A stretch of 63,679 nucleotides of DNA, filler included, from Octopus bimaculoides (taxonomy: Eukaryota), in the NCBI RefSeq assembly GCF_001194135.2. It is 5 parts of 5 records of this genome, joined end to end, with 100 filler letters (N's around TTAATTAATTAA, not from the genome) between each part and the next. Parts side by side here need not be neighbours in the genome. Positions count along the whole stretch, not along the records: positions 10,383 to 30,250 come from NC_068982.1; 4 more parts are not named here. One strand, written 5' to 3'. The notes under the pieces were generated by a model. The model ran no database searches. It was not told the origin of the DNA and saw only the letters and a program-made list of their open reading frames with translations. Shown here in pieces: positions 17,514 to 30,250 of this stretch; positions within the stretch are counted from its first letter, which is position 1; each line of letters opens with the position of its first letter. The translations under genes were made by a program, and so were the position numbers.

Positions 17514-17716
17514 ACTCGACCTGAAGAAAATTCTAACTGGGCCCCACCTGCGAGGTCATGCGCTGTTTATCTTGATATGAGATCACCATGTCGCGCACAT
17601 ATGGTTGTGATGCATGTGCCTGGTGTACCCTTATCAGACGGGTAGTCATGACGGGTATAATGGGCTTCGTATATTTTACCCCAGTGACACTTTGATGGCA
17701 TGCACTGCTCTCTCAC
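17514..17716 (+). mobile_element. AAT-tailed ~560-bp non-coding element, 3' part
   Basis: Matches the 3' portion of 57154-57709; ends ctctctcac(AAT)n. Confidence 0.85.
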
Positions 17717-17797
17717 ATAATAATAATAATAATAATAATAATAATAATAATAATAATAATAATAATAATAATAATAATAATAATAATAATAATAATA

Positions 17798-18660
17798 CCT
17801 TTTGACAAATATACTGAGGAAATCTAGGCCGATCTATGGATTTACCAAAAGATAAGAATAAATCGCCTACTTCCTATGTATGATTCGAAGATGTATACAA
17901 AAAATGAGACAAATCTGGTTTCTCTCATCCAAACAGTGAGGATATTCAGTAAAGATATTGGAATGCAGTTTAGAGTAGATAAGTGCGCAGTACTAACTAT
18001 GAAGAGAGTTTGGGAGATAAAGTCTGATAGTATAAAATTACCATAAGACAACACCATTCAATCACTATGGAATAATGAGGGATACCCGGGAGTATTTCAA
18101 GACAATGAGATAAAGGAAGGAGAAATGAGAGACTGCGAGAGCAAAAGAGTACAACGGGATGTTAAACGAATATGTAGCTTCAAAACAACAGAAAGATGGT
18201 ATGTGCCAGAACCAGAGGCTGTGAGAGAAAATGAGAATTACAAGATCTTGTGGAACATCGCCAGAAAGACTGACTATATTATTGAGGAAAGAACACCGGA
18301 CATGATTATAGAGGACAAAACAAACAGTGTAATATCATAGAGTTCGCAATTCCCTATAACAAAGTCGATACCAAAGAAGTTGAAAGAATTGAGCAATATC
18401 CGGATCGATCCAGTGAGCTGCGGAGGCTGGAAGACTGCGACAACAATTATTACTGTAGTAATTGGTGTACTTGGCACAACACCCAGAATGCTACCTAAAA
18501 GACTTCAAGAAACTGAAACTGAGATTCGCATTGTCGACCTCCAGCAAAATAGCATCCTACATTCTGCAAGAATACTAAGAAAACTTCTTGAGATTCGAGA
18601 TTTGTTGTCACCAAATCTCAAAATAAAACATCTGCTAATTTCGAGTTTGCCCAAAGCCAG
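17798..18660 (+). mobile_element. R4/Dong-like retrotransposon fragment A (decayed RT thumb plus RLE)
   Basis: IQTVRIFSKDIGMQFRVDKCAVL; WYVPEPEAVRENENYKILWN; VVIGVLG...ILRKLLEI; follows (AAT)n. Confidence 0.85.
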
Positions 18661-18878
18661 CAACTTAGTTGGAGAGGTTTAGGGGATTGGCGGCGATCTA
18701 ACGATTCTTCTAACTCGCCGTCTTAAGCAATGATGATGATGATGATGATGATGATGATGATGATGATGATAAGATTAACAATAATTATTATGACAACAAC
18801 GACAACGATAGCAATAATAATAATAATAATAATAATAATAATAATAATAATAATAATAATAATAATAATAATGATAAT

Positions 18879-19071
18879 GAAACCGTATGGCATATTACCA
18901 GCCAATGTACGCCACTAGCCCAGAAGGAATATAAGAGACTCCACAACAATATAGCCAGGCTTGTCCATTGGACACTTTGCAACAAGTATGGACTTGGCAG
19001 AGCAAAATATTGGTACGATCACAAACCCGAAGGCATCATCGAAAATAAAAATGCAAAGATCCTATAGGATT
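18879..19071 (+). mobile_element. R4/Dong-like fragment B (CCHC/RHD region)
   Basis: ETVWHITSQCTPLAQKEYKRLHNNIARLVHWTLC...WYDHKPEGIIEN; follows (AAT)n. Confidence 0.85.
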
Positions 19072-20336
19072 AGATAAAACAATATAAATGCAAATACAAA
19101 AACAAAACTAGAGCAAGCCAACAACACATAGATAAGAAGCTGCTGGTACACCACGATTATCTAATTTCTTTGTACCTGGAGAAAATTTTCTCATAATGTT
19201 CAGTTCCGAAGGTACACGTGATCACTCCAGGGAGAAGACGAGAGTAGTATTACAACGATAGAAACATTAAAACTTCTACTAGGAATCAACAACTCCGAAT
19301 AGGTGTGGCCAAAACGGCTGTTCTAAAACGGTTCTATATACCCTTCACCTATCATGTCGTCCCACAAATCACTATAATTGTTTTTTTCTTTTTTTGAGGG
19401 CATATTGAAGCACCCTCTAGTCTTCGTGAAGTTATCTGAACTTCCTCCTTGCCAGTTCTTGAATATCCCAAGCAAGGAAACATTCTTTTGCGACATGCTG
19501 CTTCTTCACTTCTTTTTACGGCTGGATTCGGCCTATATCTAAAAACCTCCTTTTTGTTTGTAAAGCTTGCAAAATAGATGTTAGCATTTTTTTTTTTTTG
19601 TGAATATCGTAAATATCCATTGTTCTTGTTACTATTTTTGCTTATGCTGTGCAAATTTGCATTGTTAAATTTTATTGTCTGCCAGTGTATTTGTTTCTTT
19701 TATTGTTGCTTTCTGTTTGTCATTTAAAAAAATCTGTTTATCTTTTTAAAATTCATCTTCGTGTATTTTTTTTTCTTTATTGAGATTGTATCCATTCTTC
19801 TTATTTTCTTTTTAATATTTCTTACTTCCCTTCTAGTAGAAGAAGCAATATTGACCTGAGTGAACGCCTAAAAAAAGCTTTTTGAACAAAANNNNNNNNN
19901 NNNNNNNNNNNNNNNNNNNNNNNNNNNNNNNNNNNNNNNNNNNNNNNNNNNNNNNNNNNNNNNNNNNNNNNNNNNNNNNNNNNNNNNNNNNNNNNNNNNN
20001 NNNNNNNNNNNNNNNNNNNNNNNNNNNNNNNNNNNNNNNNNNNNNNNNNNNNNNNNNNNNNNNNNNNNNNNNNNNNNNNNNNNNNNNNNNNNNNNNNNNN
20101 NNNNNNNNNNNNNNNNNNNNNNNNNNNNNNNNNNNNNNNNNNNNNNNNNNNNNNNNNNNNNNNNNNNNNNNNNNNNNNNNNNNNNNNNNNNNNNNNNNNN
20201 NNNNNNNNNNNNNNNNNNNNNNNNNNNNNNNNNNNNNNNNNNNNNNNNNNNNNNNNNNNNNNNNNNNNNNNNNNNNNNNNNNNNNNNNNNNNNNNNNNNN
20301 NNNNNNCCCCCACCCCAACAACAACAACAACGATAA

Positions 20337-20893
20337 ATGCCCTAATGTAATACCAGGCAGTAACTCTCATGGCTTCTGATCTTAACTGTTTGGAAGTGCT
20401 AACATGTACATATTGTGTATTGGTATAAAAGATGGTCTACAGCAAATAATTGGTTCAATACCACAGATTTGCTTTCAGTTGCTAAATCTTAATCAGTTGA
20501 TCGTGTCCCTTAGTGGCTGATGATATGTGCATCTCTGATCACGAGCAGGAGTAGTTGAAGGAGCATCATAGCTACGTGTTGAGACGGTTTCCTTGGGATT
20601 TGAATAATTCACCTCTGAAAACATGGGTGTTTCGTTCAGCATCCTTATACAACTATTATTCAGGGACCTTTTGAGCGGGATGGGTTACTCGACCTAAAGA
20701 AAATTCTAACTGGATCCCAACTGCAAGGTCATGTACGGTTTATCTTAATACAAAAGTACCATGTGGCGCACATATGATTGTGATGCATGTGCCTGGTGTA
20801 CCCTTATCAGAATGTTAGTCATGATGAGTATATTGGGCTTTGTATATTCATCGTCCGAGCGTCACTTTGATGGCGTGCGCTGCTCTTCCACTC
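20337..20893 (+). mobile_element. AAT-tailed ~560-bp non-coding element, full-length, diverged
   Basis: Colinear with 57154-57709; flanked by (AAC)n and (AAT)n. Confidence 0.85.
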
Positions 20894-28440: not shown

Positions 28441-29046
28441 AATAATAATAATAATAATAAAAATAATAATAATAATAATAATAATAATAATAATAATAAT
28501 AATAATAATAATAATAATAATAATANNNNNNNNNNNNNNNNNNNNNNNNNNNNNNNNNNNNNNNNNNNNNNNNNNNNNNNNNNNNNNNNNNNNNNNNNNN
28601 NNNNNNNNNNNNNNNNNNNNNNNNNNNNNNNNNNNNNNNNNNNNNNNNNNNNNNNNNNNNNNNNNNNNNNNNNNNNNNNNNNNNNNNNNNNNNNNNNNNN
28701 NNNNNNNNNNNNNNNNNNNNNNNNNNNNNNNNNNNNNNNNNNNNNNNNNNNNNNNNNNNNNNNNNNNNNNNNNNNNNNNNNNNNNNNNNNNNNNNNNNNN
28801 NNNNNNNNNNNNNNNNNNNNNNNNNNNNNNNNNNNNNNNNNNNNNNNNNNNNNNNNNNNNNNNNNNNNNNNNNNNNNNNNNNNNNNNNNNNNNNNNNNNN
28901 NNNNNNNNNNNNNNNNNNNNNNNNNNNNNNNNNNNNNNNNNNNNNNNNNNNNNNNNNNNNNNNNNNNNNNNNNNNNNNNNNNNNNNNNNNNNNNNNNNNN
29001 NNNNNNNNNNNNNNNNNNNNNNNNNNNNNNNNNNNNNNNNNNNNNN

Positions 29047-29372
29047 ATGGAAAAACTTTCAAAATACAAAGACCTGGAAATAGAGATAACTCGAATGTGG
29101 AATCTAAAAACAGAAACAATTCCTATCATAGTAGGTACCTTAGGTATAATAAAATAATATTCAGACAAATACATAACAAAAACACCAGGACTTACAAATA
29201 TATATAACATACAGAAAATTGCACTACTGGGTACTGCACACATTCTACGCAAAACACTTTCAATACAGTAAACATAAGAGCACCACAGCAAACCACAGCA
29301 CATACCCAAGGCGCACAGAGCTGCGCTCGGTAGTGAAGTGAAAGCACGTTATAAAAATAAAACTACTGAACA
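29047..29372 (+). mobile_element. R4/Dong-like 3' fragment G with 3'UTR
   Basis: KLSKYKDLEIEITRMWNLKTETIPIIVG...GTAHILRKTL; then an AAT-like tract. Confidence 0.9.
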
Positions 29373-29446
29373 ATAATACTAATAACAATAATAATGATAA
29401 TAGTAGTAGTAGTAGTAACAACAACAACAACAACAACAACAACAAC

Positions 29447-29815
29447 CCAGACATAATCAGCAAGGATTAGGGAAAAACACCTGTTTACTAATAGACATTG
29501 TAGTCCTTTCTGATCAAAATATTGTCCAATAAGAAGTGGAGAAATTGTCAAAGTACAAAAACCTCGAAATTGAAGTATTCAAGATGTGGGGCATGAAGGT
29601 AAAAACATTACCAAAAATAATTGGAGCATTGGGTATGATAAAAAAAAGATACATGTGAACAAAAACATAGAAGCTATACCTGGTTCCTCAACACTACACA
29701 CTATCCAAAAAATAGCACTGCTAGGAACAGCCCACATCCTACGCGAGACACTATCAATTCAGTAATACAACTTAAACAAAACAACTCACAAACACAAGAC
29801 ACTCTATCCAGTGAA
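29447..29815 (+). mobile_element. R4/Dong-like 3' fragment H
   Basis: PDII...LLIDI...EKLSKYKNLEIE..KMW...GTAHILRETL; follows (AAC)n. Confidence 0.85.
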
Positions 29816-29870
29816 ATTAATTTCCATCAGCAATGATGATGATGATGATGATGATGATGATAATAATAAT

Positions 29871-30250
29871 AAGAAACACTACTACAGACAGTACACGGCT
29901 TTACCAAGGAAATAAATATGAAATTCGGATTAGAAAAATGTGCCAAAGTAACCCTGAAAAGAGGAAAATTAGTTAAAAGTAGCAATATAACACTAGATAA
30001 AGCCAATGAAATAAGAGAACTAGACGAAAGCCAACCATATAAGTATTTAGGAGTCAATGAACTAGATAGGATACAACATACACAAATGAAAGAAAAAATA
30101 AAGAAAGAGTACTATAGACGAGTTAGATCAATACTAAAAACAGAGCTCAATGCTAAAAACAAGATAATGGGTATCAACACTTTAGCTGTCCCAGTTATAA
30201 GCTACAACTACAACATCCTTAACTGGACACTAAACGAACTATGTAAAATA
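29871..30250 (+). mobile_element. R4/Dong-like fragment I (RT thumb, uninterrupted frame)
   Basis: MKFGLEKCAKV...YKYLGV...EYYRRVRSILKTELNAKNK..INTLAVPV; follows (GAT)n(AAT)n; ends at a scaffold join. Confidence 0.9.

What the first reader, a model, noticed from the sequence alone, without database searches (positions are those of the whole stretch)
17716..30250. Microsatellite-targeted retrotransposon pile-up: at least ten co-oriented R4/Dong inserts in 12.5 kb
Seen: fragments A-I are all on the + strand. Each whose start is sequenced (G begins in a gap) starts just after an (AAT)n-type tract, and those with intact 3' ends finish in one. They belong to several families with different 3'UTRs and different ages. 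Known: Dong (R4 clade, RLE endonuclease) targets TAA repeats. Inference: each insertion splits and regenerates target, creating a self-perpetuating landing pad shared by multiple families. This could link the microsatellite abundance of this genome to retrotransposition.
Basis: partly seen in the sequence, partly recalled or inferred. Interest (0 to 1): 0.75.

Follow-up and report, generated by a model that had tools for sequence, protein, structure and literature searches.

The report
Dong-type retrotransposon pile-up in AAT repeats
One stretch of AAT/TAA simple repeat has been hit again and again, always in the same direction, by jumping genes of the TAA-specific "Dong/R4" kind; the pattern is real but is what this element family is already known to do.

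Summary
Searching 386 related proteins against the piece gave 4,897 matches, all on the + strand. They define ten LINE fragments between 17798 and 30250: A, B, D, E, F1, F2, G, H, I1 and I2. Every 5' end that is sequenced lies directly after an AAT-type tract. All 17 perfect AAT-class tracts are on the + strand.

G (24293-28438) is a full-length but decayed copy. It has a reverse transcriptase, a CCHC motif and a C-terminal restriction-like endonuclease whose model best matches the R2 endonuclease. Relatives lack N-terminal zinc fingers.

The fragments belong to two deep lineages and at least six families. Nine related loci from other genomes, including a shrimp and a coral, carry same-strand TAA tracts. 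Three of them hold head-to-tail arrays. TAA targeting by Dong is published.

This is therefore a clean example of a known kind. Fragment C is a SINE-like repeat, not a reverse-transcriptase fragment. The array starts upstream, near 16.6 kb, with three more SINE copies. The three gaps cannot be bridged, although each contiguous block shows the pattern on its own.

"Regenerates its target" is a reasonable inference. The link to genome-wide microsatellite abundance is not supported here.

The parts
16595..16891 (+). Degenerate (CAA)n/(AAT)n mosaic tract; upstream edge of the array
   Evidence: TRF; sequence
16892..17114 (+). SINE-like repeat copy 1, followed directly by (AAT)9
   Evidence: 68% identical to copy 2. 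Its last ~33 nt resemble the last ~31 nt of the 3'UTR of LINE fragment A.
17115..17222 (+). (AAT)n/(GAT)n tract
17223..17428 (+). SINE-like repeat copy 2
17441..17716 (+). SINE-like repeat copy 3. It has the same ~50-nt head as copies 1 and 2 but a different 3' body, and contains the N10 gap at 17504-17513.
   Evidence: gap length fits the homologous stretch of copy 2
17717..17797 (+). (ATA)27, a perfect tract
17798..18729 (+). LINE fragment A: end of the RT fused to the RLE C-terminus in one frame (internal deletion of ~250 aa), plus a 134-nt 3'UTR. It belongs to the E-type lineage.
18730..18878 (+). (ATG)13, a mixed stretch, then (AAT)22
18879..19070 (+). LINE fragment B: CCHC region only (78% identical to P0139); the sequence beyond it has decayed.
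20645..20893 (+).
   Evidence: 85% identical to 17514-17716; start coordinate approximate
20894..20985 (+). (AAT)n tract, about 30 units
20986..21195 (+). LINE fragment D: starts at the RPDI motif of the RLE, has no stop codons, and runs into gap 2. Same family as H.
   Evidence: 96% identical to 29047-29163
22149..22220 (+). (AAT)24, a perfect tract at the right edge of gap 2
22221..23664 (+). LINE fragment E: RT C-terminus, CCHC and RLE, with at least 3 frameshifts; a divergent lineage
23665..23731 (+). (AAT)22, a perfect tract
23732..24068 (+). LINE fragment F1: C-terminal end and 3'UTR of an A-like family, followed by (AAT)4
24081..24166 (+). LINE fragment F2: an ~85-nt 3'-terminal stub of the same family group
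24167..24292 (+). (TAC)24 followed by (TAA)19
24293..28438 (+). LINE G, full length: ~700-nt 5' region, an ORF equivalent to aa 1-1210 (RT 26300-27000, CCHC ~27700, RLE 27919-28242) and a 193-nt 3'UTR. It has at least 5 frameshifts, many stop codons, and RPD changed to RPN.
28439..28525 (+). (ATA)29 running into gap 3
29047..29350 (+). LINE fragment H: last 73 codons plus the 3'UTR; begins at the edge of gap 3
29351..29446 (+). Degenerate AAT/TAG/AAC mosaic tract
29447..29832 (+). LINE fragment I1: starts at PDI of the RLE and includes the 3'UTR
29833..29872 (+). (ATG)10(ATA)4 tract
29873..30250 (+). LINE fragment I2: RT C-terminal part, 126 codons with no stop, cut by the end of the piece

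Best explanation
A (TAA)n/(AAT)n microsatellite locus has been colonised repeatedly by TAA-specific non-LTR retrotransposons of the Dong (R4-clade) type. At least two deep lineages and six families are involved, along with SINE-like non-autonomous repeats.

Proposed mechanism:
1. The element's restriction-like endonuclease nicks one particular strand of the TAA/TTA duplex.
2. The exposed TTA-strand 3'-OH pairs with the (UAA)n tail of the element RNA and primes reverse transcription.
3. Every copy therefore lands with its sense strand continuous with the TAA strand, and most copies are 5'-truncated.
4. Each new copy is flanked on both sides by TAA repeats: leftover target upstream, tail plus leftover target downstream. 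The locus stays a target and grows into a head-to-tail array.

Shown here: the anatomy, the orientation, the domain content, the family diversity, and the same arrangement in unrelated genomes.

Inferred from what is known of R2 and Dong: the nicking strand, priming on the tail, and tail-borne renewal of the repeat.
For: - Strand: there were 0 minus-strand HSPs among 4,897. All 17 AAT tracts are on the + strand. The junctions can be read directly.
- Domains: Pfam RVT_1 scores 7.8e-22. The best sequence matches among solved structures are R2 proteins.
- Conserved motifs: the alignment of 15 relatives conserves CxxC-x8-H-x4-C and P-D...D...K.
- Endonuclease: the AlphaFold model of 27859-28242 (pLDDT 78) best matches the R2 endonuclease region, with 8iby_C at TMq 0.65. 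Other PD-(D/E)xK nucleases follow.
- No N-terminal zinc-finger pattern was found in 8 full-length relatives.
- Relatives: L001-L006 and L007-L009 all carry same-strand AAT tracts next to the element. L001, L003 and L008 hold head-to-tail arrays.
- Full-length 5' junctions read (TAA)n|G in G and in L005. The published B. mori Dong junction primer reads (TAA)7 GCTCCC.
- Literature: Dong elements target TAA repeats (PMC3812793; PMC7998251), and R4/Dong elements combine an RT with a REL-endonuclease (PMC7998251).
- The units share no nucleotide similarity except D/H and the SINE copies, so the array was not built by duplication.
Against: - The three large gaps cannot be bridged, so the four blocks may not all be neighbours.
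- Two gap edges (21195 and 29047) lie inside the same high-copy family, at 96% identity. That is typical of repeat-induced assembly breaks.
- No RT phylogeny against named Dong, R4, Rex6, HERO or NeSL sequences could be made.
- The N-terminal Myb-like domain reported for R4/Dong was not detected by single-sequence Pfam scans.
- No HDV-like 5' ribozyme was found by Rfam in G or in relatives.
- A, I1 and F2 end in ATG or TAC repeats rather than AAT.
- Pure tracts could be maintained by slippage rather than by insertion.
Confidence: 0.85

Rival explanations
1. Scaffolding artefact. Contigs that each end in AAT repeats or in a high-copy Dong family were chained by spurious mate-pair links, so the 12.5-kb pile-up is not one locus.
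For: All three large gaps abut an AAT tract or a Dong fragment. D, left of gap 2, and H, right of gap 3, overlap by 117 nt at 96% identity. This shows that contig breaks fall in a repeated family.
Against: Each contiguous block already holds 2-5 co-oriented units separated by AAT tracts. One example is E, F1, F2 and G in 22149-28525. All four blocks have the same polarity (1/8 by chance if the joins were random). The 4% D/H divergence argues that they are two copies. Related loci on single long contigs show the same arrays.
Confidence: 0.2
2. No true target specificity. The AAT tracts are only the elements' own 3' tails, and later copies fall into these A/T-rich tails by a loose endonuclease preference.
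For: L006 has a 3' (AAT)7 but only (ATA)2 in AT-rich DNA upstream of its putative 5' end. Tail units vary between ATG, TAC and AAT.
Against: Full-length G and L005 have long TAA tracts directly upstream of their 5' ends. So do the truncated copies L002, L003, L007 and L009. Polarity is invariant. Published work describes Dong as TAA-specific.
Confidence: 0.08
3. The elements belong to another endonuclease-bearing clade, such as HERO (some families of which are microsatellite-specific) or NeSL, rather than R4/Dong.
For: No named reference was compared. PMC4640811 notes microsatellite-specific HERO families. The two lineages here are only ~39% identical to each other.
Against: The single ORF lacks N-terminal zinc fingers. 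The target is TAA and the 5' junction reads (TAA)n|G, as in B. mori Dong. The host range of the relatives (cnidarians, crustaceans, insects, fish) matches that reported for Dong-like elements (PMC7998251).
Confidence: 0.1
4. The array arose by tandem or segmental duplication of one element-plus-repeat unit.
For: D/H (96%) and SINE copy 3/copy 4 (85%) are similar pairs.
Against: No other nucleotide similarity exists between units. C-terminal protein identity between units is only 22-62%. The units start at different ORF positions and have unrelated 3'UTRs.
Confidence: 0.03

Closest known systems
Dong (Bombyx mori) and Dong-like elements (DongAg, DongBg, Dong of Darwinula), R4 clade
   Same: Single ORF with RT, CCHC and a C-terminal restriction-like endonuclease. 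Inserted in (TAA)n with fixed polarity. Full-length copies begin with G right after a TAA unit. Copies carry TAA-type 3' tails.
   Different: Protein similarity to named Dong sequences was not measured. Two lineages only ~39% identical share the site here. Some copies carry ATG or TAC tails. No 5' HDV-like ribozyme was detected, whereas B. mori Dong has one (PMC3774820).
R2 (28S rDNA-specific LINE)
   Same: Closest solved structures by sequence (E 1e-16) and by fold for the endonuclease domain. The presumed mechanism, target-primed reverse transcription from a site-specific nick, is the same. Both accumulate in a repeated target.
   Different: No N-terminal zinc-finger/Myb module was detected. 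The target is a microsatellite rather than rDNA. Sequence identity is low.
Other microsatellite-specific LINEs (Waldo, Mino, Kibi, Koshi of the R1 clade; Togen of NeSL)
   Same: A simple repeat serves as a safe-haven target, and insertion is oriented.
   Different: The R1-clade elements use an AP-type endonuclease. All of them target ACAY, AC, TC, TTC or TG repeats, not TAA (PMC3812793, PMC4640811).
Drosophila I factor (recalled, not checked here)
   Same: A LINE whose 3' end carries TAA repeats made during retrotransposition. This is a precedent for the tail regenerating the repeat.
   Different: It has an AP endonuclease and is not TAA-targeted.

Membership tests
R4/Dong clade LINE | Reverse transcriptase of the non-LTR type | tested here: met
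   Pfam RVT_1 scores 7.8e-22 on the stitched G ORF. F/YxDD and the other RT blocks are conserved.
R4/Dong clade LINE | C-terminal restriction-like (PD-(D/E)xK) endonuclease preceded by a CCHC motif, with no AP endonuclease | tested here: met
   The CCHC and P-D...D...K columns are conserved. The model of 27859-28242 best matches the R2 endonuclease region. No other nuclease domain appears in Pfam. G itself carries RPN instead of RPD, consistent with decay.
R4/Dong clade LINE | No N-terminal zinc fingers (unlike R2 and NeSL) | tested here: met
   No C2H2 or CCHC pattern occurs in the first 400 aa of 8 full-length relatives.
R4/Dong clade LINE | Divergent N-terminal Myb/SANT-like domain (PMC7998251) | tested here: inconclusive
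   A conserved KW(S/T)xEEY...W...NKLxNVRR block is present. Single-sequence Pfam scans give no Myb hit. The paper needed HHpred on an alignment to find it.
R4/Dong clade LINE | Insertion in (TAA)n with fixed orientation (Dong subgroup) | tested here: met
   Shown in the window and in nine related loci.
R4/Dong clade LINE | Placement within the R4 clade in an RT phylogeny with named references | not testable with these tools
   No Dong, R4, Rex6, HERO or NeSL reference sequences could be retrieved. Source names for the relatives are uninformative.
R4/Dong clade LINE | HDV-like self-cleaving ribozyme at the exact 5' end (shown for Dong and R4, PMC3774820) | tested here: inconclusive
   Rfam finds nothing in G's 5' end or in relatives. 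The MFE fold is no better than shuffles. Covariance models are poor at finding these ribozymes, and G is decayed.
R2 clade | Insertion in 28S rDNA; N-terminal zinc-finger plus Myb DNA-binding module | tested here: not met
   The flanks are TAA repeats. No rRNA match was found in Rfam. No zinc fingers were found.

The most novel reading that the evidence does not exclude
The SINE-like repeats in the array (16892-17716 and ~20645-20893) may be non-autonomous partners of a TAA-specific Dong-type LINE. Copy 1 shares its last ~31 nt with the 3'UTR end of LINE fragment A. All four copies in the piece sit co-oriented inside the AAT array, and three of them end directly in an AAT tract. If this SINE is a high-copy family of the host, Dong-driven SINE amplification would both use and seed (AAT)n tracts genome-wide. 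From memory the SINE resembles the abundant octopus SINE, but that was not tested. This would be a microsatellite-targeted SINE and a concrete source of one microsatellite class.
Probability: 0.3. Interest if true: 0.5.

Novelty: already known. Interest (0 to 1): 0.28.

Why it matters
It is a clear, multi-family illustration of how a site-specific LINE turns a simple repeat into a growing safe-haven array. It also shows why such loci break short-read assemblies, since every gap here sits at an AAT tract or in a Dong copy.

The principle itself, Dong targeting TAA repeats, is established, and Dong-R4 elements are already annotated as abundant in several invertebrate groups. The practical value is for annotation and assembly. 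The possible SINE partnership is the only part that could add something new.

Tried and rejected
- Rfam at relaxed E-values, over the whole piece, over G's 5' end and over four related loci. It gave only low-complexity microRNA-like noise and no HDV-like ribozyme.
- MFE fold of G's first 158 nt. It was no better than shuffles, z = 0.43.
- Pfam scan of N-terminal regions at E up to 10. No Myb/SANT hit.
- Word-indexed homology search with fragment A. No hits. The exhaustive HMMER search then found 878 relatives at about 30-35% identity. They match A in two stretches that lie ~250 aa apart in the full-length proteins, which confirms the internal deletion.
- ARAGORN. No tRNA-like head was recognised in the SINE-like repeats.
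- The original Dong, R4 and mosquito R4 papers are not held in the library.
- The shared RPDI truncation point of D and I1 was considered as a possible hotspot. For 45 pairs in a ~4-kb element, chance is about 0.08, so it is not significant.
- Tandem duplication as the origin of the array was rejected on the self-BLAST result.

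
Full report
**Material**

The usable piece is 10383-30250. It is 35.5% G+C and has N runs at 10795-11267, 17504-17513, 19892-20306, 21196-22148 and 28526-29046. Perfect simple repeats of at least 12 bp cover about 10% of the sequenced bases.

**Checking the observation**

A first homology search used the reverse-transcriptase-to-C-terminus translation of 24293-28438. It found 1,075 relatives, the best at 58% identity. tblastn of two full-length relatives (P0008, 1210 aa; P0025, 1213 aa) against the piece hit only the + strand.

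The matches, together with the directly read junctions, define ten LINE fragments:

| Fragment | Window coordinates | P0008 residues and notes |
|---|---|---|
| A | 17798-18729 | aa 690-797 fused in frame to 1046-1210 |
| B | 18879-~19070 | aa 1031-1094 |
| D | 20986-21195 | aa 1107-1174 |
| E | 22221-23664 | aa 727-1177 |
| F1 | 23732-24068 | 3'-terminal piece of an A-like family |
| F2 | ~24081-24166 | 3'-terminal piece of an A-like family |
| G | 24293-28438 | aa 1-1210 |
| H | 29047-29350 | aa 1138-1210 |
| I1 | 29447-29832 | aa ~1108-1210 |
| I2 | 29873-30250 | aa 711-836 |

F1 and F2 are separated by (AAT)4. Every 5' end that is sequenced follows a trinucleotide tract within 0-2 nt.

All 17 perfect AAT-class tracts of at least 4 units lie between 16638 and 29871 on the + strand. 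There is no ATT tract, and no AAT tract occurs in the 6 kb upstream.

Two corrections are needed:

- Fragment C has no reverse-transcriptase homology. Its 3' ~250 nt are a SINE-like repeat, 85% identical to 17514-17716.
- The array begins further upstream, near 16595, with three more SINE-like copies in the same orientation.

**The gaps**

- N10 gap (17504-17513). It lies inside SINE copy 3. The homologous copy 2 has ~11 nt at that place, so continuity is supported.
- Gap 2. Its left flank is D at codon ~1174 and its right flank is (AAT)24. H is 96% identical to D over the 117 nt they share. H shows that about 190 nt of element plus a tail would complete D.
- Gap 3. Its left flank is (ATA)29 and its right flank is H from codon 1138.
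- Gap 1. Its flanks are uninformative.

No frame can be followed across any large gap, so linkage of the four blocks rests on the scaffolder. Two gap edges fall in the same high-copy family, which is what repeat-induced breaks look like. The pattern does not depend on the joins, because each block holds 2-5 co-oriented units by itself.

**What the elements are**

G is a full-length copy that has decayed. It has at least five frameshifts and many stop codons.

- Its stitched translation hits Pfam RVT_1 at 7.8e-22, with a weak zf-RVT hit.
- The closest solved proteins are R2 retrotransposon proteins, at 1e-16 to 1e-12.
- An alignment with 14 relatives conserves the RT blocks, a CxxC-x8-H-x4-C motif and a C-terminal P-D...D...K pattern. 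G itself has RPN instead of RPD.
- An AlphaFold model of 27859-28242 (pLDDT 78, pTM 0.70) best matches the endonuclease region of R2 structures: 8iby_C, 9dou_A, 9nl3_A and 8gh6_A. Other PD-(D/E)xK nucleases follow.
- Eight full-length relatives have no zinc-finger pattern in their first 400 residues.
- They share a conserved KW(S/T)xEEY...W...NKLxNVRR block, which may be the divergent Myb-like domain reported for R4/Dong (PMC7998251). Pfam did not recognise it.

This is the architecture described for R4/Dong: a reverse transcriptase plus a REL-endonuclease, inserted in rDNA or microsatellites (PMC7998251). I could not place the sequences in a tree with named Dong, R4, Rex6, HERO or NeSL references. 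Clade membership therefore rests on architecture and target.

**Family diversity and age**

C-terminal protein identity between fragments is 22-62%, except for D/H at 89%. G, D/H, I1 and I2 resemble the P0008-type lineage. A, B, E and F resemble a second lineage (P0125-type), found with E as query. For example, B is 78% identical to P0139. The two lineages are about 39% identical to each other.

The 3'UTRs are unrelated, apart from A/F1/F2 and a weak E/F1 similarity.

Decay is unequal. D, I2 and B have no stop codons in 64-126 codons. H has one. A, E, F and G are heavily damaged. "Several families, different ages" is therefore supported, although age is judged only from ORF decay.

**Relatives elsewhere**

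I fetched the genomic surroundings of nine relatives.

P0008-type lineage:

- L002, the closest relative, has (ATA)13 upstream and (ATA)8 downstream.
- L001 has three to four head-to-tail copies separated by (TAA)5.
- L003 has three to four copies separated by long AAT tracts.
- L004 (Penaeus chinensis chromosome), L005 (the coral Oculina patagonica) and L006 carry AAT tracts next to the element.

E-type lineage:

- L007 has (TAA)18 directly upstream.
- L009 has (TAA)32 upstream and (ATA)14 downstream.
- L008 has (AAT)4 between two elements.

In every case the AAT strand is the sense strand of the ORF. Full-length G and L005 begin with G immediately after a complete TAA unit. The published B. 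mori Dong junction primer reads the same way, (TAA)7 GCTCCC... (PMC3774820).

Oriented TAA association and head-to-tail arrays are thus properties of the whole protein family. They are not a peculiarity of this locus or this genome.

**Mechanism**

The best-supported reading is target-primed reverse transcription at a strand-specific nick in (TAA)n. Priming is on the TAA-type RNA tail, which fixes the orientation. Frequent 5' truncation follows as usual for LINEs. Each insertion leaves TAA repeats on both sides, so the locus remains a target.

The nicking and priming steps are inferred from R2 biochemistry and from the published specificity of Dong (PMC3812793, PMC7998251). They are not shown here.

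Evidence bearing on "regeneration":

- Tracts next to old copies are still 19-29 perfect units long.
- L006 has a 3' (AAT)7 without a comparable 5' tract.
- Some copies carry variant tails, GCA(ATG)n in A and I1 and (TAC)24 in F2. This would fit tails copied reiteratively from the RNA end.
- Against this, slippage alone could also keep tracts long and pure.

Tandem duplication is excluded as the origin of the array, because the units share no nucleotide similarity.

**The wider claim**

The suggested link to the genome's microsatellite richness is not borne out by this piece. The flanking 6 kb is equally SSR-dense (10.1% against 9.5%), but its repeats are TA, CA, GT, TC, AG and TGTA. It has no AAT tract and no Dong homology. 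At most the AAT class could be tied to these elements.

**Comparison with the literature and novelty**

- TAA targeting by Dong in silkworm, mosquito and snail is reviewed in PMC3812793. PMC7998251 states it for "most insects, mollusks and cnidarians".
- Dong-R4 elements are reported as abundant and recently active in octopus genomes (PMC13282606, PMC8967140, PMC9115989).
- The penaeid shrimp SSR paper links transposable elements to SSR expansion in general but does not mention Dong (PMC7878876).
- I found no paper that describes multi-family head-to-tail Dong arrays explicitly. They nevertheless follow directly from the known specificity, and they appear in three unrelated assemblies fetched here.

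I therefore rate the finding as a correct reading of an already known kind.

**The part that might be new**

The SINE-like repeats inside the array are the only potentially new element.

- Copy 1's last ~33 nt align with the last ~31 nt of A's 3'UTR. The score is 30 against 15.2±2.9 for shuffles, and 0 of 500 shuffles reached it. Fifty-five pairs were tested, so this is suggestive only.
- All four copies in the piece are in the AAT array and co-oriented.
- Three of them end directly in an AAT tract.

This would fit a SINE mobilised by a TAA-specific Dong LINE. From memory the repeat resembles the abundant octopus SINE. I did not test that, and the host identity remains an inference.

Noticed in passing
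16892-17114, 17223-17428, 17441-17716, ~20645-20893: Four co-oriented SINE-like repeats lie inside the AAT array. They form two subtypes that share a ~50-nt head. Copy 1's 3' end resembles the 3'UTR end of LINE fragment A (18693-18724), which suggests a LINE/SINE shared tail and TAA-targeted SINE insertion. ARAGORN finds no tRNA-like head.
   Followed up: partly
20986 and 29447: D and I1 belong to different families, yet both are 5'-truncated at the same codon, the (R)PDI motif of the endonuclease. Chance is about 0.08 over all pairs, so this is probably coincidence. A truncation or joining hotspot is possible.
   Followed up: partly
18723-18770, 29826-29861, 24167-24237: Some copies have variant 3' tails: GCA(ATG)13 after A, GCA(ATG)10 after I1 and (TAC)24 after F2, each followed by AAT/TAA units. 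These may be tails copied reiteratively from a variant RNA end, or mutated and re-expanded microsatellite.
   Followed up: no
28375-28400; L002 3098-3122: G and its closest relative L002 share a 3'UTR hairpin about 40 nt before the TAA tail (GGTCTC-TGGGT-GAGATT against GGTCCC-TGGGT-GGGACT), with one compensatory pair change. Other relatives also have a stable hairpin at that position. It may be the RT recognition element.
   Followed up: partly
21079-21195 and 29047-29163: Two gap edges lie in the same LINE family (96% identity, 5 substitutions in 117 nt). This points to a young high-copy family that breaks the assembly. The two could in principle be one mis-scaffolded copy.
   Followed up: partly
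19071-19891 and 20307-20644: These sequences, between B and gap 1 and between gap 1 and the C SINE, have no detected homology to the LINE proteins or to other parts of the piece. The first is T-rich and low in complexity. Their origin is unknown: decayed element, other repeat, or host DNA.
   Followed up: no
L005 1146-1290; L006 ~1700-1775: The 5' ends of full-length relatives are G+C-rich with long-range complementary segments, for example GGCTCGCGC...GCGCGAGCT in L006. They are candidates for the HDV-like ribozyme known from Dong and R4. Rfam did not detect one.
   Followed up: no
10383-16500: The region upstream of the array is dense in dinucleotide and TGTA repeats. It has no AAT tract, no LINE homology and no convincing ORF.
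   Followed up: partly
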